This document shows, piece by piece, positions 1,118 to 57,495 of a DNA stretch of 64,000 nucleotides. The first letter of the stretch is position 1; each line of letters starts with the position of its first letter. The DNA lies in IMG/VR virus record IMGVR_UViG_3300032046_000001, positions 124,001 to 188,000 of that record; one strand, written 5' to 3'. The notes beneath the pieces are model-generated. The model worked only from the letters and a program-made list of their open reading frames with translations. It was not told where the DNA came from and searched no databases. The position numbers and the translations under genes were made by a program.

Positions 1118-1202
1118 AAAGAGAGATAGAGACTTAAGCTCGAAAAGAAGTATTCCGAAACTTCCTTCTCTCTTTATTATTCATTCGGAATGATTATCGG
1201 AG
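1118..1202 (+). ncRNA. Structured leader element, copy 1 (three-way junction plus pseudoknot)
   Basis: P1 1118-26/1167-75, P2 GAG/CTC, GAAAA linker, P3 GAAGT/ACTTC; loop ATTCCGAA is complementary to TTCGGAAT (1184-91) and TCGGA (1197-1201, over the SD). Confidence 0.75.
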
Positions 1203-1210
1203 ATTATAAA

Positions 1211-1816
1211 ATGAAAATTTATGAAAATTTAGATTTACAAGATTTAGATGTAGAAGTTTGGAGAACTATAAAAGAATACCCAGATTATTCTATTAGTAAT
1301 TTAGGAAGGGTTAAATCATTAAAATTTGGAAAAGAAAGAGTATTAAAACAAGGTAAAAATAGTAGAAAATATTTTTGTGTTGTTTTATCTAAAAATAAAA
1401 ATAAAAAAACAAAATTAGTTCATATACTTGTTTTTGAAATTTATAATAATTACAAATTAAAATCAAATGAGTGTATTCATCACAAAGATGGGAATAAAGA
1501 AAATAATTATTATAAAAATTTAGAAAGAATGACTAAATTAGATCACTTAAGTTTACACAACAAAGGAGAAAACAATCCTATGTTTGGAAAATATTTATCT
1601 ACAAAAACAAAAATGATGATAAGTAAAAATCATTTCGATAATAAAGGTGAAAATAATCCACATCATAAACTAACAGAAGAACAAGTTATCCAGATAAAAT
1701 TATTATTAAAAGAGGGAATATTAACTCAAGAAGAAATAGCTGATATATTTGGAGTTGGTAAAATGACAATTTCAAAAATAAAGAGAGGAAAATTATGGAA
1801 ACATGTGAAAATATGA
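1211..1816 (+). mobile_element. NUMOD4-HNH homing endonuclease with C-terminal HTH
   Basis: VWRTIKEYPDYSISNLGRVKS (NUMOD4), IHHKDGNKENN (HNH), KLTEEQVIQIKLLL...TQEEIADIFGV HTH; ATG 1211 follows GGAG (track ORF starts 1190). Confidence 0.88.
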
Positions 1817-2475
1817 AAAGTGATATGTCAATAAAAGCAATTGAGTGTTTTTCAACCTATCAAGGAGAAGGGTTATTTTCAGGAAAAAGAGTTGTATTAA
1901 TAAGATTCAAAGAATGTAATCGTGATTGTTGGTATTGTGATACAAAAAATAAAATGAAATATTATGAGGAAGGTGAATATAAATTAGAAGATATTCAAAA
2001 ATTGATAGATGTTGAATGTGCCAATCTTCTCATAACAGGTGGTGAAGTAACATTTGATAAAAATTTTCATCAAACAATATTATTATCAAATAAATTAAAA
2101 TATTCCGAGATGTATATTGAAACAAATGGTTATAAATTAGAGGAACTTTATCAATATGTAAAAAATAATAAAAATATTTATTTTGTCTATTCGCCAAAGA
2201 TCTTCAATGATAAAGATCTATTTAGTGACCCAACTGATGTCTTTATGAACTTGATTGGTAGAAATTTAATTATAAAAGTTTTATATGATGGAACTAATCC
2301 CTTTGTGGAAAAATATTTAAATAAGATTACTAAATACAGAGACAGTGTTTATTTACAACCTATGGGTTCAACCAAAGAAGATATTATTAAGAATATGAAA
2401 GTTGTTCTTGAGGCTGCGGATAAATATAAGTTTAATATTTCAAGTAGATTACATCTAATTCATGATTTCAGATAG
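1813..2475 (+). CDS. queE: 7-carboxy-7-deazaguanine synthase-like radical SAM protein
   Basis: FSTYQGEG, IRFKECNRDCWYCDT (CxxxCxxC), LITGGE, IETNG, SPK, YLQP, RLH; ATGA overlap with the upstream gene. Confidence 0.85.
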   Translation: MKSDMSIKAIECFSTYQGEGLFSGKRVVLIRFKECNRDCWYCDTKNKMKYYEEGEYKLEDIQKLIDVECANLLITGGEVTFDKNFHQTILLSNKLKYSEMYIETNGYKLEELYQYVKNNKNIYFVYSPKIFNDKDLFSDPTDVFMNLIGRNLIIKVLYDGTNPFVEKYLNKITKYRDSVYLQPMGSTKEDIIKNMKVVLEAADKYKFNISSRLHLIHDFR

Positions 2476-2484
2476 GAAAAGATT

Positions 2485-2676
2485 ATGTACAATGAACAAT
2501 CAGTATGCGACGGTTTGACTATTTATGAAAACTGTAAAGGTGAATGGCCGAATCCTCAGAAATTTAAAATTAAGATTGAATCAGGAATATGTGACATATG
2601 TAATGAAGAAAAAGAAATATTAGTATTTCTTGGAAATAATATATGTGTGGAGTGTATTAAAAAGGATAGTATATGA
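2485..2676 (+). CDS. Small Cys-rich hypothetical protein
   Basis: 63-aa ORF after GGAAAAG, two CxxC pairs, ATGA-coupled to the next frame. Confidence 0.55.
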   Translation: MYNEQSVCDGLTIYENCKGEWPNPQKFKIKIESGICDICNEEKEILVFLGNNICVECIKKDSI

Positions 2677-2829
2677 AATTTGAATTAACTTGTGATATAA
2701 ACTTTGAAGCTGATGATAAATACAACGCATTTTTTATTGAGTAATCATTTCAAATGTTTATATGAAGATGAAGACGATTTATATTTAGAATTTAATGGTG
2801 ATATAAATTTAAAACGGATTGATATATGA
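2673..2829 (+). pseudogene. Frameshifted small ORF
   Basis: ATG 2673 overlaps the previous stop. The frame stops after 23 codons, but a shift at the T6 run (2730-35) continues to TGA 2827-29, which overlaps the purM ATG. Confidence 0.5.
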
Positions 2830-3917
2830 ACTATAAAGATTCTGGTGTGGACACTAAATTAGAAACTATCGGATTAGACATTTTTATTGATAATATAAAA
2901 CAATCATTCAACAATATTCCATCAGGAGTTGGTAAAGTTTTTGATGATATTGGTTATTTCGCCAATGTCATCAATCTTACTAATGATATGAGTTTAGTTG
3001 TGTCAGCCGATGGAGTTGGAACTAAAGTTTTAATTGCCCAAATGATGAATAAATATGACACAATCGGAATTGATTGTATTGCCATGAATATAAATGATAT
3101 TATTTGTCTTGGTGCAAAACCTATCAGTTTTTTGGACTATATTGCCCTACAATCACCACAACTTGAGTTGATGGAACAACTATCTGAGGGACTATTAAAA
3201 GGTGCTCAGATGGTAGGTATAACGATTCCTGGTGGTGAAACAGCACAAGTACGAGATCTTATTAAAGGTGTTCGAAATAATTTTGGTTTTGATATAGCTG
3301 GTTTTGGTATTGGTATGGTTAATCCTGAGAAAATAATTAATGGAAGTGATATTAAAATTGGAGATTCTATAATCGGAATTGAAAGTAGCGGATTACATTC
3401 TAATGGTTATTCGTTAGCACGTAAAGTTTTACTCGACTCTAACAAATATACAGTAGATAGTTATATTCCAGAACTTCAAATGACTCTTGGTGAGGAACTT
3501 TTAAAACCAACAATTATATATTCATCAATGGTTAATGAAATATTACATGAAGATATTGATGTTAAGGCACTCATAAATATTACTGGTGATGGTATGATGA
3601 ATATGGTGAGAGTCAAGAGAGATAATATTCGATTTGCGATTGATTATCTACCAGATCCACCACCTATATTTAAATTAATTCAAAAGGAAGGAAATGTTTC
3701 AGATGCTGAGATGTATAATATTTTCAATATGGGAATTGGATTTGTAACAGTTGTTAGTCACGAAGATGAAGAAAAAATAAAAGACACTATAAGTCGATTT
3801 GACTTAAAGTGTTGGAAAATTGGAAGAATTGAAAAAGCGGATATAAAGAAAGTCAATATTTTCCCCAAAAGATTGATTGGATATCGAAGAGAATTAAATG
3901 AATGGGAAGATTTTTAA
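2826..3917 (+). CDS. purM: Phosphoribosylformylglycinamidine cyclo-ligase (AIR synthetase)
   Basis: YKDSGVD, SADGVGTK, IGIDCIAMNINDI, FLDYIA, GGETA, SSGLHSNGYSL, LLKPT, NITGDG, FNMGIG. Confidence 0.95.
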   Translation: MNYKDSGVDTKLETIGLDIFIDNIKQSFNNIPSGVGKVFDDIGYFANVINLTNDMSLVVSADGVGTKVLIAQMMNKYDTIGIDCIAMNINDIICLGAKPISFLDYIALQSPQLELMEQLSEGLLKGAQMVGITIPGGETAQVRDLIKGVRNNFGFDIAGFGIGMVNPEKIINGSDIKIGDSIIGIESSGLHSNGYSLARKVLLDSNKYTVDSYIPELQMTLGEELLKPTIIYSSMVNEILHEDIDVKALINITGDGMMNMVRVKRDNIRFAIDYLPDPPPIFKLIQKEGNVSDAEMYNIFNMGIGFVTVVSHEDEEKIKDTISRFDLKCWKIGRIEKADIKKVNIFPKRLIGYRRELNEWEDF

Positions 3918-3938
3918 AATTTAAAGGAGAAATAAAAA

Positions 3939-4226
3939 ATGAGAACATTAGAAGCAGTAAAAGACAAAATTATAGTAGAGTTGGACATCCCTCTTGAGAG
4001 TAAGACAGAATCTGGTCTTTTCATTCCAGAGACAGCAGTAAACGAACCACAGAAATATGGCAAGGTTGTCTCAATAGGTGAAGAGGTTTCTTATAGAGAC
4101 AAGTTGAATATTGGTGATATTATATCTTTTCATGGACGTGCTGGTCAGGATATAATCTTAAACCGTAAGATTTTCAAGGTGCTTCTTGAAGGTGAAGTTT
4201 ATGGAATCATAAAGGAAACTAATTAA
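3939..4226 (+). CDS. groES: Co-chaperonin GroES
   Basis: 95 aa; DKIIVE, KTESGLFIPETA mobile loop, G.VVSIGE, GDII.F; SD AAGGAG. Confidence 0.9.
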   Translation: MRTLEAVKDKIIVELDIPLESKTESGLFIPETAVNEPQKYGKVVSIGEEVSYRDKLNIGDIISFHGRAGQDIILNRKIFKVLLEGEVYGIIKETN

Positions 4227-4534
4227 TGAAAGAACTAACAACTGACAATTTTAATACAATTAAGTCAGGAGTTTCTATTGTAGATTTTTGGTCGGAGTTC
4301 TGTATGCAGTGTGTAGCACTGCAACGGACTCTCGATCAATTAGAAAAACAGTATACCCAAGTTAATTTTTATTCAGCTAATGTTGGACATTTATCTGACT
4401 TGGCTGGAGATTTAAATATAACAGCACTACCTACGATAATTTTCTTAAAAGATGGTGAAGAAAAACTACGAATTTTTGGAAACAGACCCCAAAAATATAT
4501 TGAAGATGAAATTAAAAAATTATTAGGAGAATAA
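4226..4534 (+). CDS. Thioredoxin
   Basis: VDFWSEFCMQC (CxxC), ITALPTIIFLKDGEE. Confidence 0.88.
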   Translation: MKELTTDNFNTIKSGVSIVDFWSEFCMQCVALQRTLDQLEKQYTQVNFYSANVGHLSDLAGDLNITALPTIIFLKDGEEKLRIFGNRPQKYIEDEIKKLLGE

Positions 4535-4535
4535 A

Positions 4536-5051
4536 ATGAGACGAACAATACTTATTAACGGTTCTGGTGGAACTGGAAAAGATGAACTTGTAAAGATGGC
4601 AAAAGATATTTTGGACATTCCTGTTTATAATATCTCATCTATTACACCTGTTATGGAAATGGCCAAACTTATGGGATGGGATGGAACAAAAGACGACAAG
4701 TCACGAAAACTTTTAAGTGATTTGAAAGATCTTTGGATCGAATTTAATAACGGTCCAATTAATAAACTGATTCAAACAATCGATGAAATTGATGATCAGT
4801 ACAATCCTCCAGATCCATATCTCATTTTCATTCATATTCGTGAACCATATGAAATTGAAAAGTTTAAGAGTAACTATCCAGATACAGCTACCGTTATGGT
4901 AAAAAGAAGTAAAACTACAAAATACAATAATGATAGTGATCAATTTGCAGATGAATACGCATATGACTATATAATTGAAAATGATGGGACACTAAACGAA
5001 CTGAAAGATGCAGTTGAAGTACTACTTAAAGATCTGAATATTTTAAAGTAG
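4536..5051 (+). CDS. P-loop kinase, dNMP-kinase-like
   Basis: INGSGGTGKD Walker A; C-terminal YDYIIENDGTLNELK typical of phage nucleotide kinases. Confidence 0.6.
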   Translation: MRRTILINGSGGTGKDELVKMAKDILDIPVYNISSITPVMEMAKLMGWDGTKDDKSRKLLSDLKDLWIEFNNGPINKLIQTIDEIDDQYNPPDPYLIFIHIREPYEIEKFKSNYPDTATVMVKRSKTTKYNNDSDQFADEYAYDYIIENDGTLNELKDAVEVLLKDLNILK

Positions 5052-6443: not shown

Positions 6444-6486
6444 AAAGAATAGAATGATAACATATTAATAAAAAGGAGAAATATAT

Positions 6487-10034: not shown

Positions 10035-11960
10035 TTGATGTCACTAAAAGACACTTTTACAAAATTAAAGACATCTATTGTCGGAACTAAGACTGTTTCC
10101 ATTGATACTAATCTCGACAATGCTATAAAAGATATATCTTCATTTAAAAATCAGACTGGACAACTTGGGTATATAGAACTCCTCAAAAGTTTAATATCAA
10201 AACAAAGTGATTTTAATCTTGGTAGTCAAAAATTCATGCAACATGGTGGGGCACCAAGTCCTGCTATGTATGGTCAAGCTAACCGATTGATGAGATATAA
10301 ATCATATAATGCCATATTTTCAAATATCTCATATTGTTATAGAGCATTGACAGTACTGGTAGACAATATTATTTCACCTGATGATATAACAAAACAATCA
10401 CTTGATATTAAACCAAAGTCATATTTAGAATCTGAAATAGAAACTGAATCAAAAACAGAATTGGTCAAAGAGGTTGTTAAGCAAACAAAACTTGAACAAA
10501 ATATTGATTTAATTGTCAAAAATGTTTTAGCTTATGGTGATTTCTTTGTTGAGATTGGTTCATCAAAAACTGCCTTGGTTAGCCGTGCGTATTTAATCGA
10601 ATCATATGGTAATGAGTATGCTCAGAATGAAGCCATTGATATACTAAATGTTAAAGATGATAATGAAAATAATCTCAGAATTATGATGGATTATACATCA
10701 TTCAATGAGTCTTCAAATGAGACTAAAGATGATAAAATGGACATCTCTGATATAAAATTAATGATGCATGATCCAAGGAATGTTATTAAATTACAGAGTG
10801 AGATGTTTCCGATATGTTTTGGTTATCTTGTATTTCCAAAATATATAATGAGTCATACAAATCAATTATCAGATCAAGCTATAAATGATATTTGTATATC
10901 GATATTAAAAAATCTGGAACAACGAATTCCAGACATGAAAGAATTTAGGGATAATAAAGAACTGCGAGATATTATCGCAACGATTGCTAGAGGAACAGAA
11001 TATGGTCTTGGGAGACAGGTTCAGATTAGATTTGTTCCAGCAGATAAGATGCAACACTTTAGAATTCCATCTACTAAATATTATCCCTATGGCGAATCTA
11101 TTATTGATTCGGTCACATTTCTTGGTAAGGTTTTAATCGCTCTTGAAACAGCTTTAACTATTCAAAGATTATCAAGATCAACTGAGAAATTTAAAATTGG
11201 TGTTGAGTTAGGGTTGCCAAGAGATGCTAGAAAAATTATTGATGGAATGCGCGAACAGTTCAAGAAAAGAAAAATAAGTATGGATTCTTTTGGTACTGTT
11301 GATACAATACCATCAATGATTACAACATTCGAGGATATATACATCCCTCAAAAAGATGGAAAACCATTTGTTGATATTGGAACCTTCAATGAAGGTCGTG
11401 TTGATATTAGAAGTAAAGTTGATGAACTTAAGTTTGTTCGGGATAGTTTAGTTGCTGCACTCGGTGTTCCACCTCCGCTTATTGGTATTGAAGAGAACGC
11501 ATCAATGAAAGCAACATTAGCAGAAGAGAATATACTGTTTGCAAGGACAATTGTTAGTCATCAAAAATATTTAACAAATCAAATAAACGATTTAATTAAA
11601 AAAATATTTCAATTAATTGATCCTGAAAGTTCATTAACATTATTGGATAATGTCTCAATAGCGTTTCCAACACCCAAATCTTTACAATTTGAACTTTTAT
11701 CTAGGAGAATGAACGACACAATTAATTTGATTGAAAGTTTAGAAAGAATTGGTATTCCAAAAGAATATTCAAAGAAGAAATATTTACAAGATATTGATTG
11801 GAACGATGTTGAAAATTTCCAAATTGATGGTGATATTGAAAAGAAATTGGGTATTGCTCCACCAGAAGACACTGGATTCGGTGGTGGTGGGTTTGCTATA
11901 GGAGGTGCTCAAGGTATGTCTGGAGTTCCTGGTACAGTTCCACCACAAACACAATATTAA
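10035..11960 (+). CDS. Portal protein (T4 gp20-like)
   Basis: YGDFFVE, YYPYGESII, LETALTIQRLSRSTE, EDIYIPQKDG, LVAALGVP; first gene of a portal-protease-capsid block. Confidence 0.85.
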   Translation: MMSLKDTFTKLKTSIVGTKTVSIDTNLDNAIKDISSFKNQTGQLGYIELLKSLISKQSDFNLGSQKFMQHGGAPSPAMYGQANRLMRYKSYNAIFSNISYCYRALTVLVDNIISPDDITKQSLDIKPKSYLESEIETESKTELVKEVVKQTKLEQNIDLIVKNVLAYGDFFVEIGSSKTALVSRAYLIESYGNEYAQNEAIDILNVKDDNENNLRIMMDYTSFNESSNETKDDKMDISDIKLMMHDPRNVIKLQSEMFPICFGYLVFPKYIMSHTNQLSDQAINDICISILKNLEQRIPDMKEFRDNKELRDIIATIARGTEYGLGRQVQIRFVPADKMQHFRIPSTKYYPYGESIIDSVTFLGKVLIALETALTIQRLSRSTEKFKIGVELGLPRDARKIIDGMREQFKKRKISMDSFGTVDTIPSMITTFEDIYIPQKDGKPFVDIGTFNEGRVDIRSKVDELKFVRDSLVAALGVPPPLIGIEENASMKATLAEENILFARTIVSHQKYLTNQINDLIKKIFQLIDPESSLTLLDNVSIAFPTPKSLQFELLSRRMNDTINLIESLERIGIPKEYSKKKYLQDIDWNDVENFQIDGDIEKKLGIAPPEDTGFGGGGFAIGGAQGMSGVPGTVPPQTQY

Positions 11961-11968: not shown

Positions 11969-12059
11969 AGAGAGATAGAGAACGATCGCTCGAAAAGAAG
12001 TAATCCGAACTTCCTTCTCTCTTTAAATTTATCATTCGGAAAATAACCAAAAATCGGAG
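11969..12059 (+). ncRNA. Structured leader element, copy 2
   Basis: P1 11969-75/12016-22, P2 GAG/CTC, GAAAA, P3 GAAGT/ACTTC; loop TCCGA is complementary to TCGGA at 12036-40 and 12053-57 (over the SD GGAGG). Confidence 0.75.
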
Positions 12060-12067
12060 GTTATAAA

Positions 12068-12676
12068 ATGAAAATATTTGAAAATTTGGATTTAAAAGAT
12101 TTAGAAAATGAAATATGGAAAAATATTTTAGATTATGAAAATAATTATCAAATTAGTAATTCAGGACGAATTAAATCATTAAAATTTGGAAAAGAAAAAA
12201 TATTAAAACAGATCAAAGATAATTATAATTATTTTTTTATCAATTTGTGTAAAAATGGAAAATCTAAAATAAAATATATTCATCATCTTGTTTATGAAAC
12301 TTTCAAAGGAAAATTAGAAGAAGGTTATGATGCTCATCATATAAATGAAAATAAAGAAGATAATTTTGTTGGTAATTTAGAATCTAAACCACATAACGAA
12401 CATTCTAGTTTTCATAATAAAAATAAAATAGTTTCAGAAGAAACAAAAAAGAAAATATCTAAAAGTGGAAAAGGAAGAGCGGTTACAGAAGAAACAAGAA
12501 TTAAAATTAAAGGAAAAAATAATCCAAATTACAAAATAACAAATCAAAAAATTATTGATATCAGGATTGACATAGAAAAAAAATTAAGTCAAAGAAAAAT
12601 TGCTAATAAATACGATGTTAGTCAAACAACAGTTTCTAGTATAAAAACTGGAAAAGTTAGGGAGTTATATGAATAA
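12068..12676 (+). mobile_element. NUMOD4-HNH homing endonuclease
   Basis: IWKNILDYENNYQISNSGRIKS, AHHINENKEDN, C-terminal HTH (SQRKIANKYDVSQTTV). Confidence 0.88.
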
Positions 12677-23136: not shown

Positions 23137-23934
23137 ATGATAGATAATTATTATATTTATATTTACTTAGATCCCAGAAAATCTGGACAATACTGTTATA
23201 AAGATTTTTGTTTTTTATCAGAACCGATGTATATTGGAAAAGGTAAGGGAAAAAGATATAAAGAAGTTGGTAGTAAGAAAAGAAGTCAACTATTTATTAA
23301 TAAAATAAATAAAATTAAACAATCTGGTTTAGAACCAATTGTTTTTAAATTATATGAAAATTTAAATGAGAATCAGTCATTTGAATTAGAAAAAAATTTA
23401 ATAAAAGAAATCGGAAGAATTGATTTAAACTTTGGTTCACTTCTTAATATGACAGATGGTGGAGAAGGTATAAGTGGATTTACATTCTCTAAATTTTCAA
23501 AAATAAAAATGTCAAATTCACAAAAAGGAAAATTTAAATCAGAAGAATCTGTAAATAAGAAAAAAATAAATTATCAAGAAATTAAAAATGAATTTAAAAA
23601 AAGAGGATATCAATTATTAATGGAAAAAAGTGAATATAAAAACTCTTTTACTAAATTAAATTATATTTGTCCAGAAGGTCACAAAGATTCTATGAATTGG
23701 AGTAATTTTAAACAAGGTCGAGATTGTCCAATTTGTTATAGTGAATTGTGTTCTGAAAATATAGGAGAAAAATCCCATAACCATAAACTAACAGAAGAAC
23801 AGGTTATTCAAATAAAATTATTATTAAAAGAAGGAAAATTAACTCAACAAGAAATAGCTGATATGTTTGGTGTTAATAGAACAACAATTTCAGCTATAAA
23901 AACAGAAAAAATATGGACAAATATTAAAATATAG
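23137..23934 (+). mobile_element. GIY-YIG homing endonuclease with zinc-ribbon and C-terminal HTH
   Basis: YYIYIYLDPRK...PMYIGKGKGKR, NMTDGGEG, CPEGH...CPIC, KLTEEQVIQIKLLL. Confidence 0.85.
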
Positions 23935-27285: not shown

Positions 27286-27325
27286 TTTGTATTGAGTTTA
27301 TTTTTTTATATGAGTTAACATAATA

Positions 27326-27417
27326 TAAATAAGGGATAGAACTCATGATTCGAAAAGGATGACTTTCACATCTTTCCCTTATTTATTTTTTTGAAAGAAT
27401 AATCTTATGAAAGGAGG
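27326..27417 (+). ncRNA. Structured leader element, copy 3
   Basis: 11-bp P1 TAAATAAGGGA/TCCCTTATTTA, P2 GAA/TTC, GAAAA, P3 GATG/CATC; loop CTTTCA is complementary to TGAAAG at 27392-97 and 27408-13 (over the SD AGGAGG). Confidence 0.78.
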
Positions 27418-27425
27418 TTATAAAA

Positions 27426-27578
27426 ATGAAATGTGAAATTTGTGGAAGAGAGTTTGAGAATAAAAATAGGTTATCTATTCATTTATCAAGAACTCATAAA
27501 ATGACATCAAAAGAAGGTTATTGTCGTATCTGGGATTGTGGTAATTTAAAATTTAAAATTATAAATGAGGAAAAATAA
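27426..27578 (+). pseudogene. Internally deleted endonuclease remnant (50 aa, not in ORF track)
   Basis: MKCEICGREF...IHLSRTHK (C2H2 finger) joined directly to GYCRIWDCGNLKF, a C-terminal motif I recognise from phage endonuclease-like proteins. Confidence 0.6.
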
Positions 27579-29844: not shown

Positions 29845-29867
29845 ATTATAATTAAAATATTAAATCG

Positions 29868-29948
29868 AGAGAGAATAGGGTGCGCACCCGAAAAGATACC
29901 AACTCCAGTATTTTTCTCTCTTTATTTTTTTGGAAATTAACTAAGGAG
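29868..29948 (+). ncRNA. Structured leader element, copy 4
   Basis: P1 29868-75/29914-21, P2 GGGT/ACCC, GAAAA, P3 GATAC/GTATT; loop CTCCA is complementary to TGGA (29931-34) and the SD GGAG (29945-48). Confidence 0.7.
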
Positions 29949-29953
29949 AGTTA

Positions 29954-30487
29954 ATGATAAAAGATAATAATAATGAAATTTGGAAAACTATAGAAAATTT
30001 TTCAGATTATCAAGTCAGTAGTTTTGGTAGAGTAAAATCACTGAAGTTTAAAAAAGAAAAAATATTAAAATTAGGTAAAACTAAAAAAGGTTATTTTATA
30101 GTGGTTCTATGTAAAAATGGAATATATAAAACTAAAAATGTTCATGTATTGATTTATGAAACTTTCTACAATAATAAATTAAAATTAAATGAGTGTGTTC
30201 ATCATAAAGATGAGAATAAAGAAAATAATTATTATGAGAATTTAGAAAAAATAAGTGTATCAAAACATAGTAGCTTCCACAATAAAGAAAAAAGAAATCA
30301 TTTTTATAGAATAAAAAATTATGGAGAAAAAAACTCACATCATAAATTAACAGAAGAACAGGTAATTCAAATTAAATTATTATTGAAAGAAGGAAAATTG
30401 ACTCAACAAGAAATTGCCAATATATTCGGAATTTGTAGATCAACGATATCATTAATAAAAAATAGAAAAATTTGGAATTGTAATTAA
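29954..30487 (+). mobile_element. NUMOD4-HNH homing endonuclease with C-terminal HTH
   Basis: IWKTIENFSDYQVSSFGRVKS, VHHKDENKENN, KLTEEQVIQIKLLL. Confidence 0.88.
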
Positions 30488-33075: not shown

Positions 33076-33687
33076 GTGAATGATTTTTATATTTATATTT
33101 ATTTAGATCCAAGAAAACTTGGAAGATATTGTTATGAAAATATCTGTTTTTTATATAGTCCGCTTTATGTTGGAAAAGGAAAAGATAGAAGATGGAAAAA
33201 CATTAATGGAAGAAATCCACATTTTGAAAATAAAATAAATAAAATTAAAAAATTGGGATTAGAACCAATTGTTATAAAATTATTTGAAAATTTAAGTGAG
33301 AAAGAGTCTTTAGATAAAGAAATTGAATTAATAAAAGAAATAGGAAGATTTGATTTAAAAACTGGACCTATTGTTAATGAAACTATTGGCGGTGAAGGAA
33401 AAAGTGGAAATATTGTTTTAGAAGAAACAAGAAAAAAAATGAGTGAAAAAAAGAAAGGAATATCTAGATCGATAGAAACAAGAAATAAAATTAAAGAAAA
33501 TCATGCTAATTTTAAAGGAGAAAATAATTCAACTTCAAAATTAATAGAACAAGACGTTATCGAAATAAAAATGTTACTTATAGAAAAAAATTTCACACAA
33601 ACACAAATCGCTATTATTTTTGGAGTTAATCGAGCAGCAATTTCAAAAATAAAAACAGGTAGAACGTGGAATCATATAAAAATTTGA
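33076..33687 (+). mobile_element. GIY-YIG homing endonuclease with C-terminal HTH
   Basis: FYIYIYLDPRK...PLYVGKGKDRR, NETIGGEG, KLIEQDVIEIKMLL..TQTQIA. Confidence 0.85.
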
Positions 33688-36633: not shown

Positions 36634-36642
36634 ATTGACAAA

Positions 36643-36684
36643 AAAAATATAACGGAGAGATAAAAGCTTCTCCGTTATATTTTT
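36643..36684. terminator. 16-bp hairpin between convergent genes
   Basis: AAAAATATAACGGAGA...TCTCCGTTATATTTTT, with A/T tails on both sides. Confidence 0.8.
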
Positions 36685-36689
36685 CATAT

Positions 36690-37061
36690 TTATTGAATTA
36701 ATGACTGAAGATTATTAATCTCTGCGGAACACAAATTGATCAACACATCCATAAATTCAGCCAATGTTTGTTGTGATATATTTTTACCACCTTGCTGAAC
36801 CAAAACAATTCCGGTAATCATTGGTGATCTTGATTTCATCACGATATCAATGATATCTATATGAAAAGTTTCACCACCCATGTCTCGATATCTATAGAAT
36901 TCGATTTCAGTTTGTGGAAGAATTACTACATTATTTTTAACAATATTAGAAATCAAGGCAAGAAAAACCAGTGGTGATAATGTTTCAATATTAAAATAGA
37001 ATGTGGATGTGCGATAATTGATAGTACAAAAATTTTTCATGTGGTTCCTCCAATCAGGCAA
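36690..37061 (-). CDS. Hypothetical protein
   Basis: 123-aa ORF. Confidence 0.6.
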   Translation of the reverse strand: MPDWRNHMKNFCTINYRTSTFYFNIETLSPLVFLALISNIVKNNVVILPQTEIEFYRYRDMGGETFHIDIIDIVMKSRSPMITGIVLVQQGGKNISQQTLAEFMDVLINLCSAEINNLQSLIQ

Positions 37062-48542: not shown

Positions 48543-48551
48543 GGGAACAAA
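48543..48551 (+). promoter_or_regulatory. GGGAACAAA motif
   Basis: Directly abuts leader copy 5. Confidence 0.55.
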
Positions 48552-48637
48552 TAATTGAGAGATAGAACCCATGATTCGAAAAGAGAAAACCTTGATTCTC
48601 CTGCTCTCAGTTACTATCAAGGAATAACAACAAGGAG
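48552..48637 (+). ncRNA. Structured leader element, copy 5
   Basis: P1 48552-61/48604-13, P2 GAA/TTC, GAAAA, P3 GAGAA/TTCTC; loop CCTTGA is complementary to TCAAGG (48617-22) and CAAGG (48631-35, over the SD AAGGAG). Confidence 0.78.
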
Positions 48638-48647
48638 TTATTAAAAA

Positions 48648-49241
48648 ATGAAAATTTATAAAAATTTAAATTTACAGGATTTAAATGGTGAAATCTGGAA
48701 AGTTATAGAAAATTTTCCAGATTATCAAGTTAGTAGTTATGGAAGAGTTAAATCACTAAAATGTAGAAAAGAATTAATAATTAAACAACATATAGATTCT
48801 AAAGGATATTTGCGTACATCTATATATAAAAAAGGTAAAAAAGTTCATAGACTAGTTTATGAAACATTTAAAGAAAAATTAAATATAGATTATGATATCC
48901 ATCATATAAATGAAAATAAAGAAGATAATAATATTAATAATTTGGAGAAAAAATCTCATATTTTACATTCAATTAATCACAATCCTAAAGGCAATAATCA
49001 TAAAAATTATGGCAAACATCATTCTGAAGAATCAAAGATTAAAATAGGTAAAAATCATGTTGATATTCGTGGAATTAATAATCCAAGTAGTATATTATTA
49101 ATTCAAGAAATTATTCAAATTAAATTATTATTAAAAGAAAAAATATTATCTCAAAAAGAAATAGCAGAAATATTTGAAGTTCATCCAATGACTATATCAT
49201 CTATTAAAAATAAAAGAACTTGGTCATATATAATAATATAA
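48648..49241 (+). mobile_element. NUMOD4-HNH homing endonuclease inserted against the local strand
   Basis: IWKVIENFPDYQVSSYGRVKS, IHHINENKEDNNINNL, C-terminal HTH. Confidence 0.88.
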
Positions 49242-50334: not shown

Positions 50335-50338
50335 TTTA

Positions 50339-52002: not shown

Positions 52003-52012
52003 TTTATCTTAT

Positions 52013-52948: not shown

Positions 52949-52951
52949 AAC

Positions 52952-53134
52952 GAAAATAGAAAAGGAGAAAATTCAAGTCATCACAAATTGACAGAACGAG
53001 ATGTTATTCAAATAAAATTATTATTAAAAGAAGGAAAGTTAACTCAAAAAGAAATAGCCGATATGTTTGGGGTTTCAGTATATACGATTTCAGATATAAA
53101 AAGAGAAATAACTTGGTATCATATAAAAATTTAA
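52952..53134 (+). pseudogene. Orphan C-terminal HTH of a homing endonuclease (not in ORF track)
   Basis: KGENSSHHKLTERDVIQIKLLLKEGKLTQKEIADMFGV...TWYHIKI*; in-frame stop at 52934-36, no nuclease domain upstream. Confidence 0.75.
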
Positions 53135-54330
53135 TTACCTACTATAACACCTATTGGAAATAATTTAACCACTGGTTCTATTAAATCAGATTGATCTTCA
53201 ATTACTTTATCAATATTTTTATATACTGCCGGAGCTTCGTCGAGTGGAATCTGATTTGTCCAAATTCTCTCCATTGATTTTTCCACTAATTCTCTATTTA
53301 AAGTTTTATTAGCCTCTCTTCTTCCTAATACTCTACCAGCACCATGCGATGATGTTTCAAAACTCTCTTTATTTCCCAGTCCACGCACGATATAACTTGC
53401 TGTTCCCATAGACCCTGGTATAACACTTAGTTGATCTTTTCGAGCTGCTGTCGCTCCCTTACGATGCACAACAACATCCTTTCCAAAATGCCTTTCAAAT
53501 GCTACATAGTTATGATGAATATTAATCTCTTGTTGAACTGAACAAGCTAACATTCCACAAGTAATAGACGTAAATATATTCATCATTCTTCTTCTATTTT
53601 CAAAGGCAAATTTTAAAGCGAAATTCATCAATTCATAATACGCCTTACCTTCTTTAGTTTCAATTGGTAAATATGCCAAATTTGGATCTGGTAACTGAAT
53701 ATGATATATATTCATTAAGTGTGTTGCTTGATGATGAAATTCATTACATATTTGATAACCAAGATTACGACTACCGGAATGAATCATCAACCATATATAA
53801 CCATCTTCACCTTTTAACATTTCAATAAAATGGTTTCCAGACCCTAAAGTTCCTAATTGATATCTTGATTCATTCAATGCTGACTGAATATAAGTTGGAA
53901 ATTCTGGGTGATCTTCAAAACCGTCCCATGTTTGTGGAAGAGTATGACCAATTCCTTTGCCATGTGGAACAACCCGACATGTTTCACTCATGATTCTATC
54001 AATCTGTTCTGATATGATATTTTCTGATTTGAAATCGGTTTGAACTGCAATTATACCACATGCTATATCACTACCAACTCCATAAGGAAATATAATATTC
54101 TCAGTGGCTGCAACACCACCGATGGGAAAACCATAACCACAGTGTGCATCCGCTGATAAAACTCCCCATTTATAAATAAATGGAAAACTACAGATATTAC
54201 CCATCTGCTGTAGTGCTGAATTCTCAACATCTTCACACCAAGACTTGATTGGAACATGAAGATTTTGTGCAATCTCTCTTTCCGCAATTCCTCTAAATAA
54301 ACTTGACTCTTTAGATAATACCCATTTCAT
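53131..54330 (-). CDS. rtcB: RNA 3'-phosphate ligase RtcB
   Basis: DAHCGYGFPIG, DIACG, GTLGSGNHFIE, HSGSR, HHNY, HRKGAT, PGSMGT, SHGAGR, DEAPAVYK. Confidence 0.95.
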   Translation of the reverse strand: MKWVLSKESSLFRGIAEREIAQNLHVPIKSWCEDVENSALQQMGNICSFPFIYKWGVLSADAHCGYGFPIGGVAATENIIFPYGVGSDIACGIIAVQTDFKSENIISEQIDRIMSETCRVVPHGKGIGHTLPQTWDGFEDHPEFPTYIQSALNESRYQLGTLGSGNHFIEMLKGEDGYIWLMIHSGSRNLGYQICNEFHHQATHLMNIYHIQLPDPNLAYLPIETKEGKAYYELMNFALKFAFENRRRMMNIFTSITCGMLACSVQQEINIHHNYVAFERHFGKDVVVHRKGATAARKDQLSVIPGSMGTASYIVRGLGNKESFETSSHGAGRVLGRREANKTLNRELVEKSMERIWTNQIPLDEAPAVYKNIDKVIEDQSDLIEPVVKLFPIGVIVGN

Positions 54331-54902
54331 ATATGTCCCTCAATTTTCATTGTAGTCAATTTAACATTTTTGGCATGATAGTAATATTCTGGTGAAATAA
54401 AACCTCTTGATTTTTGTATATCGATGTATATATGTTTGTTAATAAATTCTGAACCATAATCATCAATTTTATCTCCATCAATATTTTTTATTTTTAATTT
54501 CTTCTTTCCCTGAGATAAAATATGATCTTCTGTAGCTTGAAAAATCTCATCTTTTCTATAATCTTGTTCCATCAAATCTATTAAATAACACGCCCTTAAA
54601 ATATAAATTTTATTTTTCTGTATAATAGGAAATGCGTCTCTAACATCACACAGCCATATTTCATATCTAATTCTCCCTGGAAATTTATATCTCCATGATG
54701 TTAAAACGTGTCTAAGTTCGACTTCAATATTATACAAGTCTTCTTCACGATCAATTTTATAAATGAAAGCTGGTCTTTTTGACCACTTATTTGGTTCATA
54801 TATTTGACACAATTGGTGTCCGAGAGGTAATACAGATGATGTTCTTCTATCACCTTTTATAGAATCATCATATTCGAGAACAACTGCTTTAATAAACATC
54901 AT
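54327..54902 (-). CDS. Hypothetical protein
   Basis: 191 aa, coupled on both sides. Confidence 0.65.
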   Translation of the reverse strand: MMFIKAVVLEYDDSIKGDRRTSSVLPLGHQLCQIYEPNKWSKRPAFIYKIDREEDLYNIEVELRHVLTSWRYKFPGRIRYEIWLCDVRDAFPIIQKNKIYILRACYLIDLMEQDYRKDEIFQATEDHILSQGKKKLKIKNIDGDKIDDYGSEFINKHIYIDIQKSRGFISPEYYYHAKNVKLTTMKIEGHI

Positions 54903-55936
54903 GACCTCCTAAATATTCCGATATCACCATAAAGTGATTCAAACTCTTCTCTTGTATATAGAGATTTTTTATCCAATCCAAAAAAATCAAATCGGATATT
55001 TAGTCTATTCTCAATACAATTAATATACTCAAATGTTTCTTCAGAAACTTCTCTGTCGATATAATCAACATGATTCATTACAAATCTTGTTGGTCTATTT
55101 ACTATAATCGATTTTCTAGCAACTCCATAATCAAAACATCCAGCAATTCTTCTAATCCTATTAGTAACAGACGTATATTCAATAACTTGTCTTGATAACT
55201 GTTTTGATAACTCATCCCATGTTGTTTCTAAAAATAGTGGACCTGAATTACCACCAACTCTTATAGGATATGATCTGAAAACCATTACTATATCATCAAC
55301 ATCGAGTGGGCTTAAACCAGCTTCAGACACAAAACCAGCCGCTGAAGTATCACGAGAAGTAACAAACGGATAATGTTGTGAATGAAGAAGTGATAATCCG
55401 AATCCTTGGGTTCCCTCAATAATAATTCTATTTCCCATATCGAGTTGTATTCTCATGAAACGTTGAGATTCTCGAATATAATCATATAATAAAGGTTCAT
55501 CTCCAGCTAAACGTACTTTATCACGACCAATACGTCTAATCACAGCTTCACCAGTTCCACTACAAGTAGAACCTATTTTGCAACCTAATAATTTTTCTTT
55601 TTCATTATTGACATCTTCATCAGATATTAACATGGCATTTGGATCTATTATTAATCGATTTATTGAAATACCTGTTAATTCAATTTCTTTGAATAATAAT
55701 TTTAAATTGATATAACTTCCAGCAGGTAATACACAATTAATACGAGAAGTAATAGCAGATACGGGAAGTTGTCTCAATATAATAGATTCACCAGAATTAT
55801 TAATTATTGTATGTCCAGAATTTGGACCACCAACTCTAACAACAGTAGAGACGTTCTTGTCAAATGATAAATAGTAAGTTACTTTGCCTTTGCCTTCAGA
55901 ACCATATTGACCACCAACTATAACTGTAACTGGCAT
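54899..55936 (-). CDS. Adenylosuccinate-synthetase-family protein with PurZ/PurZ0 signature
   Basis: GGQYGSEGKG (Ser13 where PurA has Asp13), GPNSGHT, EGTQGF, YPFVTSRD, PIRVGGNSG, SVTNRIRR, NHVD. Confidence 0.75.
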   Translation of the reverse strand: MPVTVIVGGQYGSEGKGKVTYYLSFDKNVSTVVRVGGPNSGHTIINNSGESIILRQLPVSAITSRINCVLPAGSYINLKLLFKEIELTGISINRLIIDPNAMLISDEDVNNEKEKLLGCKIGSTCSGTGEAVIRRIGRDKVRLAGDEPLLYDYIRESQRFMRIQLDMGNRIIIEGTQGFGLSLLHSQHYPFVTSRDTSAAGFVSEAGLSPLDVDDIVMVFRSYPIRVGGNSGPLFLETTWDELSKQLSRQVIEYTSVTNRIRRIAGCFDYGVARKSIIVNRPTRFVMNHVDYIDREVSEETFEYINCIENRLNIRFDFFGLDKKSLYTREEFESLYGDIGIFRRS

Positions 55937-56226
55937 TTATTTTTTCCTCTATTTCTAAGTTTATTATTATAATTTTCAACATCATTTTTGATTTTTTCAA
56001 CTAGAAATTCTATAAAAGTATCTTTATCAAATTGTGTCATTTCTTCATCAGATATTTTAAATGTACGCGTGAGTGTACCTGAATATGTTTTCATACCTTC
56101 AATAAAAAATACTGAAATTTCTATCTGATTATCAAAAATATCAAAAGATAAGGTATTACTGTAAGGTAATTTTTGTGAGACTGTGTATAATAAATTTTTT
56201 GTCTCTAAAAGAAAAGTCAGTGGCAT
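55918..56226 (-). CDS. Hypothetical protein
   Basis: 102 aa. Confidence 0.55.
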   Translation of the reverse strand: MPLTFLLETKNLLYTVSQKLPYSNTLSFDIFDNQIEISVFFIEGMKTYSGTLTRTFKISDEEMTQFDKDTFIEFLVEKIKNDVENYNNKLRNRGKNKCQLQL

Positions 56227-56247
56227 ACAATGTTCTCCATTTGTTTT

Positions 56248-56697
56248 TCAATCTTCATGATTTTCTTCTAAAATTTTTTTCATTATTTCTATGGCATCTT
56301 GTTTAGCATGTTCTTCATCAGTGGCAAATAAATAAACTCCTCGATGATGAATATAACCTATATACTGCATAAACGTTTCTGGTGATTCATACACATAATC
56401 TTTTTCAACAACTTTAATTTCTTTTATTTTTAGATTCTTAGAATCATATTTTGAAGGTTTCGGATAGTTTGCAAAGTTTGATCTAATATCAGGTTCAAAA
56501 ATAATACAAAAATAACTTAAGTTGTGTGTGTTTGTTTTTTCAACATTTTCTACTTCGTGTTCTTCAATATAAAAATCATTTTCATCTGGAAAATTTTTCT
56601 TAAACTCTTCAAGATTTGGATTATTCATTACGGTTATTATTGGGCGATAATTATCATCTCTATCTTCATCATTTTTAAAAAAAATATAAATTTTCAT
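56248..56697 (-). CDS. Hypothetical protein, probable paralogue of 56694..57104
   Basis: Both start MK(I/V)Y and end with (F/Y)A.DE.HA...A..IM. Confidence 0.65.
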   Translation of the reverse strand: MKIYIFFKNDEDRDDNYRPIITVMNNPNLEEFKKNFPDENDFYIEEHEVENVEKTNTHNLSYFCIIFEPDIRSNFANYPKPSKYDSKNLKIKEIKVVEKDYVYESPETFMQYIGYIHHRGVYLFATDEEHAKQDAIEIMKKILEENHED

Positions 56698-57104
56698 ATC
56701 TTCTCTTTCTCCTTATCTAAAAAATCAATCATTATTTTTACAGCCTCAAATCTGGCATGATCTTCATCTTCAGCATACACACATGTACTGTATTGATTTT
56801 CAGCAGGTACTGAATAATTACGATTGATTCGATTTAACCCTTTTAAATGATATATATTTTTTTTCCATTTTCTAACAGATAAAATAACTGTAGATTTCCC
56901 TTTAAAATTTATAATATATAAATCCCTATCATCAAATGGTTCTGTATCATCAATATGAATTCCATTTAAATTTCCCAATTCAAATGGTTTTATATATACC
57001 TCTTCCATTCTTGAAAATTTTCTCAAAAATTCATCTCTTTGTTCTTCTGTTAATATCCCGACAGTTGTATCATCTTCTTCGTCGATTATAGCGTATACTT
57101 TCAC
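56694..57104 (-). CDS. Hypothetical protein, probable paralogue of 56248..56697
   Basis: As above. Confidence 0.65.
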   Translation of the reverse strand: MKVYAIIDEEDDTTVGILTEEQRDEFLRKFSRMEEVYIKPFELGNLNGIHIDDTEPFDDRDLYIINFKGKSTVILSVRKWKKNIYHLKGLNRINRNYSVPAENQYSTCVYAEDEDHARFEAVKIMIDFLDKEKEKI

Positions 57105-57106
57105 AA

Positions 57107-57295
57107 TTATCCTCCTAAAATTTCTATTAGATCATTTAAAAATGACAAGATTTCATTTTTATTTTTTGATTCTGTTATTTCATCTTTATAATTTGAAAAA
57201 TAATGTATGATGATATTTCTAATATCTTTTAATATTAGAATATCAACCTTAATAAACTCAATTCTATCGCTAGAAAAAAATGGATGAATATACAT
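57107..57295 (-). CDS. Hypothetical protein
   Basis: 62 aa, SD AAGGAG. Confidence 0.6.
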   Translation of the reverse strand: MYIHPFFSSDRIEFIKVDILILKDIRNIIIHYFSNYKDEITESKNKNEILSFLNDLIEILGG

Positions 57296-57357
57296 GTTTT
57301 ATTTATTCTCCTTTAATTTTTTTATAAAAAAAATATAATGTTTATTTTATATTCACT

Positions 57358-57371
57358 TATTAATATATATA
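57358..57371 (-). promoter_or_regulatory. TATATATATTAATA motif (minus strand)
   Basis: Exact copy at the head of the long minus-strand block. Confidence 0.5.
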
Positions 57372-57395
57372 GTTTTCTGACTATTAAATTAAACA

Positions 57396-57405
57396 GGGAA
57401 CAAAA
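57396..57405 (+). promoter_or_regulatory. GGGAACAAA motif
   Basis: Lies 5 nt before leader copy 6. Confidence 0.55.
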
Positions 57406-57410
57406 TATTA

Positions 57411-57495
57411 AGAGGGATAGAACTCATGATTCGAAAAGAAGTAGTCCCTAACTTCCTTCTCTCTCTTTATTATATTTAGGGAAAATTTAAGGGAG
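57411..57495 (+). ncRNA. Structured leader element, copy 6
   Basis: P1 57411-17/57458-64, P2 GAA/TTC, GAAAA, P3 GAAGT/ACTTC; loop TCCCTA is complementary to TAGGGA (57477-82) and AGGGA (57490-94, over the SD). Confidence 0.78.

What the first reader, a model, noticed from the sequence alone, without database searches (positions are those of the whole stretch)
1118..57495. Six-copy covarying leader RNA with a switchable pseudoknot over the SD of HNH endonuclease genes
Seen: six elements (1118, 11969, 27326, 29868, 48552, 57411) share the architecture P1-UA-P2-GAAAA-P3-(C/U)U-P1. The junction residues are fixed while the stems covary (P2 GAG/CTC, GAA/TTC, GGGT/ACCC; P3 GAAGT/ACTTC, GATG/CATC, GATAC/GTATT, GAGAA/TTCTC). 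The P3 loop changes among copies (TTCCGA, TCCGA, CTTTCA, CTCCA, CCTTGA, TCCCTA). In every copy its complement appears twice downstream: once 3' of P1 and again overlapping the SD, 5-12 nt before the ATG. Every copy precedes a NUMOD4-HNH gene or an endonuclease remnant; none precedes the three GIY-YIG genes. Inference: a cis-acting translational switch (loop pairs with decoy, SD free; loop pairs with SD site, repressed), possibly controlled by the downstream protein or a ligand. A ribozyme or ssDNA role is not excluded. I cannot match it to a named Rfam family from memory.
Basis: partly seen in the sequence, partly recalled or inferred. Interest (0 to 1): 0.92.

Follow-up and report, generated by a model that had tools for sequence, protein, structure and literature searches.

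The report
int-alpA-type leader RNA before homing endonucleases
The six repeats are real, structured RNA leaders in front of phage homing-endonuclease genes, but they are AT-rich relatives of an already catalogued orphan RNA motif (Rfam int-alpA), whose layout suggests it gates ribosome access to the gene behind it.

Summary
Six + strand elements share P1-UA-P2-GAAAA-P3-(C/U)U-P1. Each has a P3 loop whose complement occurs twice downstream, the second time at the Shine-Dalgarno (SD) sequence. Five precede NUMOD4-HNH genes and one a 50-aa zinc-finger ORF. The window is part of a 312-kb phage contig that holds at least nine copies.

The element is not unnamed. Relatives in other phage contigs match both a covariance model built only from the window copies and Rfam RF02996 (int-alpA RNA) above its gathering score. 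The window model also finds canonical proteobacterial int-alpA loci. The window copies themselves escape Rfam.

Across 26 sequences, 14 of 17 pairs show compensatory changes. Loop-swap permutations show that both downstream sites covary with the loop (0/5000). The two pairings are isoenergetic (-7.2 vs -7.1 kcal/mol), and only the second site is a good SD, displayed in a fourth, covarying hairpin.

In phages the leader precedes several unrelated nuclease families: HNH types, GIY-YIG and endonuclease VII. In bacteria it precedes variable ORFs, several just downstream of an integrase gene.

The best reading is a portable cis-acting translational gate with two alternative loop pairings. The trigger is unknown. 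Autoregulation by the encoded protein is unlikely.

The parts
1118..1175 (+). copy c1, three-way junction core: P1 1118-1126/1167-1175, UA 1127-1128, P2 1129-1141, GAAAA 1142-1146, P3 1147-1151/1160-1164 with loop 1152-1159, CU 1165-1166
   Evidence: (98.1 bits)
1184..1213 (+). c1 expression platform: site 1 TTCGGAAT 1184-1191, weak P4, site 2/SD TCGGAG 1197-1202, ATG 1211
1211..1816 (+). NUMOD4-HNH_3-NUMOD3-HTH endonuclease gene
11969..12022 (+). copy c2 core; loop 12002-12008; begins 8 nt after the stop of the portal-like gene (10035-11960)
   Evidence: (81.6 bits)
12036..12070 (+). c2 platform: site 1 TCGGA 12036-12040, P4 12043-12048/12059-12064, site 2 TCGGA 12054-12058 in the P4 loop, ATG 12068
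12068..12676 (+). NUMOD4-HNH_3 endonuclease gene
27325..27386 (+). copy c3 core; loop 27362-27368 (ACTTTCA)
   Evidence: (79.7 bits)
27392..27428 (+). c3 platform: site 1 TGAAAG 27392-27397, P4 27399-27406/27414-27421, site 2 TGAAAG 27408-27413 just 5' of GGAGG, ATG 27426
27426..27578 (+). 50-aa zinc-finger-like ORF; not demonstrably an endonuclease remnant
29867..29922 (+). copy c4 core; P2 GGGT/ACCC; loop 29900-29907 (CAACTCCA)
   Evidence: (68.5 bits)
29931..29956 (+). c4 platform: site 1 TGGA 29931-29934 (weak), P4 29936-29942/29949-29955, site 2 GGAG/GAGTT 29945-29952, ATG 29954
29954..30487 (+). NUMOD4-HNH_3-HTH endonuclease gene
48552..48613 (+). copy c5 core; loop 48588-48595 (AACCTTGA); preceded by GGGAACAAA box at 48543-48551; neighbouring genes are on the other strand
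   Evidence: (94 bits)
48617..48650 (+). c5 platform: site 1 TCAAGG 48617-48622, P4 48623-48628/48637-48642, site 2 CAAGG 48631-48635, ATG 48648
48648..49241 (+). NUMOD4-HNH_3-NUMOD3 endonuclease gene
57411..57464 (+). copy c6 core; loop 57443-57450 (AGTCCCTA); preceded by GGGAACAAA box at 57396-57404
   Evidence: (87.8 bits)
57477..57505 (+). c6 platform: site 1 TAGGGA 57477-57482, P4 57484-57488/57495-57499, site 2 AGGGA 57490-57494, ATG 57503
57503..58123 (+). NUMOD4-HNH_3-HTH endonuclease gene

Best explanation
The six elements are AT-rich, phage-borne members of the int-alpA RNA class (Rfam RF02996). Each travels with a free-standing homing-endonuclease gene as its 5' leader.

The RNA folds into a three-way junction whose junction letters (UA / GAAAA / CU) are fixed. 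The 7-8 nt P3 loop resembles the ribosome's anti-SD sequence and carries copy-specific flanks. It can pair with either of two equally good partners:
- Site 1 lies in the single-stranded linker 3-13 nt after P1. It is a poor ribosome-binding site and would form a pseudoknot with the loop.
- Site 2 overlaps the SD sequence, which is displayed in the loop of a fourth hairpin (P4) 4-12 nt before the start codon. Loop-loop pairing there would block the 30S subunit.

The partition between the two states sets how much nuclease is translated, independently of the flanking phage genes.

Shown: the structure, its family relationship, covariation of both sites with the loop, equal pairing energies, fixed spacing to the start codon, and association with unrelated nuclease genes. 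Inferred: that the pairings form in vivo, that site 2 pairing represses translation, and that something shifts the balance. That something is unknown. It could be a factor or ligand bound at the conserved junction, folding kinetics, or ribosomes terminating just upstream of P1. It is unlikely to be the encoded protein.

My confidence differs by layer: about 0.9 that these belong to the int-alpA class, about 0.7 that the RNA acts in cis on translation, and about 0.45 that it works as a true two-state switch.
For: Reality of the repeats: six hits against 0.23 expected. A covariance model built from them scores 68-98 bits on them.

Family link:
- The window-only model finds relatives in other viral contigs.
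- Of these, L129, L366, L350, L162, L341 and L322 score 36.6-44.4 bits on RF02996 (gathering score 35.8). L150 scores 35.7.
- The window-only model also hits canonical loci: L278 at 36.1 bits (E 2e-4), L256 and L219.
- The Rfam consensus shows the same P1-UA-P2-GAAAA-P3-CU-P1 order plus a tail complementary to the loop.

Structure: 93.9% of cells paired against 67.9% in shuffles. 14 of 17 pairs are compensatory. The covariation score is 0.673 against 0.18, with 0/500 shuffles reaching it, and slid controls give 0.10-0.15. G-U cells outnumber A-C cells 22 to 4.

Both sites covary with the loop: own loop against own leader gives 10.79, against 8.57 for permuted loops (0/5000, n=28). The shorter of the two complementary sites averages 4.96 against 3.86 nt (0/5000). 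A one-base loop insertion (UCCGA to UCCUGA in c7, c8 and L186) is matched by an inserted A in both sites.

Energies: loop:site 1 is -7.23 and loop:site 2 is -7.13 kcal/mol. The 16S anti-SD prefers region 2 in 62 of 69 elements.

P4 hairpin: present with at least 4 bp in 93% of elements, with the SD site in its loop.

Spacing: the start codon lies 28-45 nt after P1 in the 69 of 72 parsed elements where a downstream ORF was called, apart from one miscalled start corrected by hand.

Downstream genes: NUMOD4-HNH_3, HNH, HNH_4, GIY-YIG and endonuclease VII.

Precedent: T4-type homing endonuclease mRNAs are translationally held by RNA structures that sequester the ribosome-binding site (PMC2988022).
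Against: There are no experimental data.
- Single-sequence folding is not unusually stable (z from +0.6 to -1.5), and the junction is the minimum-energy fold in only some copies.
- c4 and L183 have only 3-5 nt of loop/site complementarity.
- P4 alone partly masks the SD, so the loop pairing might be dispensable.
- No trigger is identified.
- Rfam lists the family as a candidate sRNA gene, not a cis-regulator.
- The window copies themselves fail the Rfam threshold, so family membership rests on transitive evidence.
Confidence: 0.58

Rival explanations
1. Trans-acting small RNA, as Rfam classifies int-alpA. The three-way junction is released as a roughly 60-70 nt RNA, and its P3 loop pairs in trans with SD regions of target mRNAs, including its own family.
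For: Rfam type is 'Gene; sRNA'. The linker after P1 is U/pyrimidine-rich. c1, c2 and c9 share one loop/site sequence and c7 and c8 share another, so cross-talk within the genome is possible.
Against: A start codon with an SD follows at a fixed 28-45 nt in 69 of 72 parsed elements. Each loop matches its own leader better than other leaders. No terminator-like site was found after c5. Canonical linkers lack a proper U-tract.
Confidence: 0.12
2. Static module without switching. The junction is a 5' stabiliser or insulator and the loop:site 1 pseudoknot is constitutive. Site 2 resembles site 1 only because both are SD-like. Translation is set by P4 alone.
For: The Rfam model ends at site 1. P4 is conserved. 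Loops carry an anti-SD-like CCU/UCC core.
Against: Non-SD flanking letters of site 2 covary with the loop: UC in c1, UGAAA in c3, GAC in L350. Permuted loops fit worse at the weaker of the two sites (0/5000). The equal energies of the two pairings would be a coincidence.
Confidence: 0.17
3. DNA-level operator sites. The three short repeats (one inverted, two direct) are bound by the endonuclease's own HTH domain for transcriptional autorepression, as I-TevI does at its late promoter.
For: There is precedent for I-TevI autorepression (PMC2988022). All five HNH proteins align across a conserved C-terminal HTH-like region, and four of them give Pfam HTH hits.
Against: c1, c4 and c6 have nearly identical HTH regions but different repeats: TCGGA, GGAG and AGGGA. 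The same arrangement precedes proteins of unrelated folds and bacterial ORFs. Stems show compensatory changes and a G-U strand bias.
Confidence: 0.03
4. Ligand-sensing riboswitch or self-cleaving ribozyme. The invariant junction (UA, GAAAA, CU) is a binding pocket or active site, and the loop pairings are the read-out.
For: Junction letters are invariant from 25% to 61% GC hosts, while every stem varies. This is compatible with the two-state model above and may be its trigger.
Against: No match to any ribozyme or riboswitch family in Rfam. The junction lacks the hammerhead CUGAUGA core. Downstream genes share no metabolic theme. My retrieval patterns required the junction letters, so invariance in my own set is partly by construction.
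Confidence: 0.1

Closest known systems
int-alpA RNA motif (Rfam RF02996; from Weinberg et al. 2017, NAR 45:10811, PMC5737381. That attribution and what the authors wrote about the motif are from my memory, because the supplement is not held)
   Same: Same helix order and the same junction letters (UA, GAAAA, CU). Same P3-loop complement a few bases after P1. The same further layout (P4 hairpin, SD site, start codon about 30-45 nt after P1) is present in canonical members. Intermediates match both models.
   Different: The window copies are about 30% GC and fall below the Rfam threshold. They sit in a lytic-type 312-kb phage in at least nine copies, in front of homing-endonuclease genes. Canonical members mostly follow a same-strand gene whose stop lies 5-33 nt before P1, including integrases in E. 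coli and several other loci. Rfam lists the family as an sRNA candidate with no function.
RNA hairpins that sequester the ribosome-binding site of T-even phage homing endonucleases (I-TevI, I-TevII, I-TevIII, segB, Aeh1 mobE; PMC2988022)
   Same: Translational restraint of a homing endonuclease by RNA structure over the SD. The structure belongs to the mobile cassette.
   Different: Those are simple, gene-specific hairpins relieved by a late promoter inside the hairpin. Here there is a conserved three-way junction with two alternative loop partners, shared across unrelated phages and bacteria. Where clear extended -10 boxes exist (L101, L337, L341), the predicted start is at the 5' end of P1, so the whole structure is transcribed. 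TATAAATA is not enriched in the window.
SD-sequestering pseudoknot riboswitches (preQ1-II and SAM-II types; from my own knowledge)
   Same: A loop/tail pseudoknot decides whether the SD is free.
   Different: No ligand is known. There is no sequence or model match. Here a decoy site competes with the SD for the same loop.
HEARO / IscB omega RNA (HNH endonuclease-associated RNA and ORF)
   Same: A structured RNA next to an HNH nuclease gene in mobile DNA.
   Different: HEARO is several hundred nucleotides long and serves as a guide RNA (from my own knowledge). No Rfam hit in the window. The nucleases here are I-HmuI-like NUMOD4-HNH proteins, not IscB.

Membership tests
int-alpA RNA (RF02996) | Three helices in the order P1-P2-P3 closing a three-way junction, supported by covariation | tested here: met
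   14 of 17 pairs with compensatory changes, 93.9% of cells paired, 0/500 shuffles reach the score. The Rfam consensus structure is shown.
int-alpA RNA (RF02996) | Conserved junction letters: UA between P1 and P2, G...C closing P2, GAAAA between P2 and P3, CU between P3 and P1 | tested here: met
   for the window. for the Rfam consensus (CUAG...CGAAAAG...CCUG). One same-genome copy has GAAAAA. c3 and c4 have UU or U instead of CU.
int-alpA RNA (RF02996) | P3 loop complementary to a site a few bases 3' of P1 (model positions 67-71, AgGG) | tested here: met
   Searches show the model's end aligned to site 1. Searches show the complement and its covariation in the window and its relatives.
int-alpA RNA (RF02996) | Score at or above Rfam's gathering score (35.8 bits). 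This is an operational criterion, not a structural one. | tested here: not met
   No hit in the window at gathering. c1 is not listed even at E<=10. The criterion is met by six phage relatives (36.6-44.4 bits) that the window-only model also finds. The window-only model also finds canonical loci. I therefore file the window copies as divergent members on structural and transitive evidence, not by Rfam's cut-off.
int-alpA RNA (RF02996) | Genomic setting that gave the name: between an integrase gene and an alpA-type regulator in proteobacterial islands | tested here: not met
   Window: phage structural and replication genes and HNH genes. E. coli canonical copy: integrase, then RNA (57.6 bits), then a variable ORF, then an HTH regulator.
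Hammerhead ribozyme | CUGANGA between stems I and II, GAAA between II and III, cleavage-site UH | tested here: not met
   Only UA lies between P1 and P2. No Rfam hit.
HEARO / omega RNA | Match to the Rfam model and an adjacent IscB-type gene | tested here: not met
   (no hit). (NUMOD4-HNH_3 proteins of 177-206 aa).
T4-type promoter-in-hairpin translational control | A late promoter inside the inhibitory structure, so that late transcripts lack its 5' arm | tested here: inconclusive
   TATAAATA is not enriched in the window: 23 against 18.7 expected. In L101, L337 and L341 an extended -10 box places the start at the first bases of P1. The start sites of the window copies are unknown.

The most novel reading that the evidence does not exclude
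int-alpA-type leaders are a widespread, portable two-state translational gate that mobile elements carry with potentially harmful cargo: homing endonucleases in phages, and variable ORFs next to int in satellites and islands. The invariant junction senses a still unknown common signal, such as a host factor, an ion or a metabolite. That would make the family an orphan riboswitch-like class rather than an sRNA.
Probability: 0.25. Interest if true: 0.75.

Novelty: new member of a known kind. Interest (0 to 1): 0.5.

Why it matters
It assigns an unannotated, six-fold repeat in a jumbo phage to a catalogued but functionless RNA family. It also shows that the family's model misses AT-rich phage members.

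The comparison gives the family a concrete, testable role that, as far as I could find, the literature held here does not state. The RNA sits at a fixed distance before a start codon, and its loop has two equal partners, only one of which is the ribosome-binding site. In phages it accompanies unrelated homing-endonuclease families. This would be a shared, transferable answer to how selfish nucleases keep their expression in check. Until now that was known only as gene-specific hairpins in T-even phages.

Tried and rejected
- **Close relatives in GenBank phages:** none by DNA. The HNH proteins are under 40% identical to any, and a large neighbouring protein has one weak hit.
- **tRNAs:** none.
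- **Rfam on the window:** nothing at gathering. For c1 at E<=10, only chance microRNA-type matches.
- **Seventh copy at 36646:** it is a terminator hairpin.
- **Leaderless relatives:** homologs L003 and L004 and the window's GIY-YIG genes have no leader and are translationally coupled or have plain SDs.
- **Operator hypothesis:** rejected on HTH identity against differing repeats.
- **Upstream small ORF driven by site 1:** no consistent start codon at a workable distance (read).
- **T4 late-promoter arrangement:** not supported.
- **Terminator after P1:** none found for c5.
- **Canonical downstream ORFs:** no Pfam, PADLOC or NCBIfam family beyond one weak hit.
- **Literature:** only two papers in the library use the term int-alpA. 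One merely lists the RNA in a table; the other uses the phrase for the int-alpA-pri gene module of phage satellites. The supplement of the 2017 discovery paper is not held, and its main text does not discuss the motif.
- **c3's 50-aa ORF:** no similarity to other window ORFs.
- **Row limits:** Counts of family members are therefore lower bounds.
- **Not used:** the metagenome scan, the large protein searches and structure prediction.

Full report
**1. The observation**

A pattern made only of the junction letters (ATAG, 6-16 bases, CGAAAAG) hits these six sites and nothing else in 64 kb, against 0.23 expected.

Five copies are followed by NUMOD4-HNH_3 genes, most with NUMOD3 and a C-terminal HTH. 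The third copy is followed by a 50-codon zinc-finger-like ORF that I could not link to any endonuclease.

Single-sequence folding is unremarkable, with z-scores from +0.6 to -1.5. The case for structure therefore rests on comparison. A weaker model hit at 36646 is a terminator between convergent genes.

**2. Where the window comes from, and further copies**

The window has no close relative among GenBank phages. It is about 29% GC. It encodes a T4-like portal, a prohead protease and a family B polymerase fragment.

Protein-guided and pattern-guided scans of viral contigs show that it is part of IMGVR_UViG_3300032046_000001 (312,420 bp), about positions 124001-188000. That genome holds at least three more copies:
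- L001:5904-5959 and L194:750-805, each before a NUMOD4-HNH gene.
- L001:3388-3444, with GAAAAA in the junction. It precedes a 17-codon ORF that runs into a 5'-3' exonuclease gene.

Other HNH homologs (L003, L004) and two GIY-YIG genes in the window have no leader. They are translationally coupled to the gene before them or have plain SDs.

**3. It is a known family**

I built a covariance model from the six window copies alone (R1). It finds relatives in unrelated viral contigs of 25-61% GC.

Rfam does not report the window copies. For c1 it reports nothing relevant even at E<=10. It does report the GC-richer relatives as RF02996, int-alpA RNA, at or above the gathering score of 35.8 bits:

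| Locus | RF02996 score (bits) |
|---|---|
| L366 | 44.4 |
| L350 | 42.2 |
| L162 | 41.9 |
| L129 | 41.2 |
| L341 | 37.7 |
| L322 | 36.6 |
| L150 | 35.7 (just below) |

The Rfam consensus reads P1-UA-P2(G...C)-GAAAA-P3-CU-P1, followed by a tail ending in a complement of the P3 loop. In the other direction, R1 hits canonical proteobacterial int-alpA loci at the right place: L278 at 36.1 bits (E 2e-4), L256 and L219. An E. coli copy scores 57.6 bits.

I therefore treat the window elements as divergent, AT-rich members of this family. By Rfam's own cut-off they would not be annotated.

**4. Strength of the structure**

On 26 sequences aligned to R1, 93.9% of cells form standard pairs, against 67.9% in shuffles. 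14 of 17 pairs show changes on both sides. The covariation score is 0.673 against 0.18 (0/500 shuffles), and sliding the partners gives 0.10-0.15. The alignment is fitted to the model, which favours the structure somewhat. However, the pairs can also be read directly from fixed distances to the invariant junction letters.

G-U cells outnumber A-C cells 22 to 4, so the folding strand is the sense strand.

One caution applies. My retrieval patterns required the junction letters, so their invariance in my own set is partly by construction. The independent evidence for it is the Rfam consensus.

**5. The part beyond the Rfam model**

I parsed 72 non-redundant elements (28 phage-type, the rest canonical). 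In 69 of them an ORF with an SD could be called, and it starts 28-45 nt after P1, apart from one miscalled start corrected by hand.

The P3 loop has two non-overlapping complements in that short leader. Site 1 lies 3-13 nt after P1. Site 2 ends 4-12 nt before the start codon in nearly all elements.

Swapping loops among elements lowers the fit. The summed length of the two complements is 10.79 for own loops and 8.57 for permuted loops (0/5000, phage-type set). For the shorter of the two complementary sites the values are 4.96 and 3.86 nt (0/5000). For the six window copies only about the identity permutations reach the observed value. The canonical set gives the same result, more weakly because most of its loops are alike.

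There is also a natural compensatory example. Loops UCCGA (c1, c2, L194, L156) and UCCUGA (two L001 copies, L186) differ by one inserted U, and both downstream sites carry the matching inserted A.

Site 2 lies in the loop of a fourth hairpin, P4. Its stem covaries, for example AAUAAC/GUUAUU, UUAACU/AGUUAA, GCGC/GCGC and UGCAC/GUGCA. It has at least 4 bp in 93% of elements.

Predicted duplex energies of the loop with the two sites are equal: -7.23 and -7.13 kcal/mol (n=69). The 16S anti-SD prefers the second region in 62 of 69 elements, at -8.6 against -4.8 kcal/mol. So site 1 is tuned to the loop and site 2 to both the loop and the ribosome.

**6. What follows the leader**

| Setting | Gene after the leader |
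|---|---|
| Window phage, L156, L354; truncated in L143, L186 | NUMOD4-HNH_3 |
| L101, L337 | Classical HNH with a treble-clef domain |
| L345 | HNH_4 |
| L150 | GIY-YIG with NUMOD3 |
| L183, and four identical leader copies in other contigs (downstream ORFs not scanned) | Endonuclease VII |
| L168 | AP2-domain protein |
| L341 (locus also carries group I introns) | CapR/DUF4379 protein |
| A few other phage contigs | Non-nuclease ORFs |
| Bacteria | Diverse ORFs without known domains |

In 33 of 41 canonical loci a same-strand ORF ends 5-33 nt before P1. Several of these look, from their C-terminal sequences, like tyrosine integrases or HigA-type antitoxins; I did not confirm this with a domain search. 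In E. coli the order is integrase, RNA, variable ORF, HTH regulator, antirepressor, in a satellite-like island.

Because one RNA class precedes so many unrelated proteins, feedback by the encoded protein is unlikely. The nearly identical HTH regions of c1, c4 and c6, set against their different loop/site sequences, also argue against a DNA operator reading.

**7. Mechanism**

The most economical reading is a cis-acting translational gate. The junction has short strands on two sides and five bases on the third. From general knowledge of three-way junctions (Lescoute and Westhof's family C), that geometry folds P3 back along P1. I infer that this holds the P3 loop near the 3' tail.

There the loop can pair either with the decoy site (SD left in P4, accessible) or with the SD site (a loop-loop complex, 30S excluded). 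The pairings use the same loop bases, so they exclude each other. Their equal strength means a small input could shift the balance.

What that input is remains open. The candidates are:
- a factor or ligand at the invariant junction;
- folding order during transcription;
- in polycistronic settings, ribosomes terminating a few bases before P1. This would apply to c2, 8 nt after the portal gene's stop, and to most canonical copies.

Precedent for translational restraint of homing endonucleases by RNA structure exists in T-even phages, but as simple gene-specific hairpins coupled to an internal late promoter (PMC2988022). Here, clear extended -10 boxes in L101, L337 and L341 place the start at the first bases of P1. 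TATAAATA is not enriched in the window.

**8. Verdict**

The claim of an unnamed RNA does not hold, because this is the int-alpA class.

What is new is threefold:
- the membership of AT-rich phage copies that the family model misses;
- the multi-copy link to homing endonucleases of several families;
- the family-wide evidence that the RNA is a leader with two alternative loop partners, one at the SD.

The function is inferred, not shown.

Noticed in passing
window 7989, 9266, 14022, 21591, 48543, 57396, 60213 (all + strand): The exact 9-mer GGGAACAAA occurs seven times, always on the + strand and mostly in intergenic DNA just before + strand genes, including directly before leaders c5 and c6. 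Degenerate forms precede c1 and c3, and similar boxes precede leaders in other contigs (L143, L186, L150). It is a candidate phage promoter or regulatory box that would start transcripts at P1.
   Followed up: partly
IMGVR_UViG_3300032046_000001; L001:3388-3444, L001:5904-5959, L194:750-805: The window is part of a 312-kb viral contig that carries at least three more leader copies outside the window. One has GAAAAA in the junction and is followed only by a 17-codon ORF that runs into a 5'-3' exonuclease gene.
   Followed up: partly
window 27426-27578: The ORF behind copy c3 is only 50 codons, with a zinc-finger-like N-terminus (weak Pfam hits below cut-off). It has no similarity to other window ORFs. 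The next gene starts right at its stop.
   Followed up: partly
window 23137-23934 and 33076-33687: Two GIY-YIG (LEM-3-like) endonuclease genes lack the leader. The second is translationally coupled to the glycosyltransferase/methyltransferase gene before it.
   Followed up: yes
window 36640-36690: A strong hairpin with A-run and T-run flanks lies between convergent genes. It is probably a bidirectional terminator, and it gave a weak false hit to the leader model.
   Followed up: yes
L341:6014-7494 (IMGVR_UViG_3300025697_001371): Two group I introns (Rfam 77 and 74 bits) and weaker intron-like hits lie 2-3 kb upstream of that contig's int-alpA-type leader.
   Followed up: no
L372:3999-4065 (E. 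coli NZ_CP061754.1) and L373: The canonical int-alpA RNA fills the 91-nt gap between a tyrosine integrase gene and a variable ORF (DUF6387 or hypothetical) in a satellite-like island. The ORFs behind canonical copies match no Pfam, defence or NCBIfam family.
   Followed up: partly
window 83-1075: This ORF matches only the middle part of family B DNA polymerases. The polymerase gene may be split or fragmented near the first HNH cassette.
   Followed up: no
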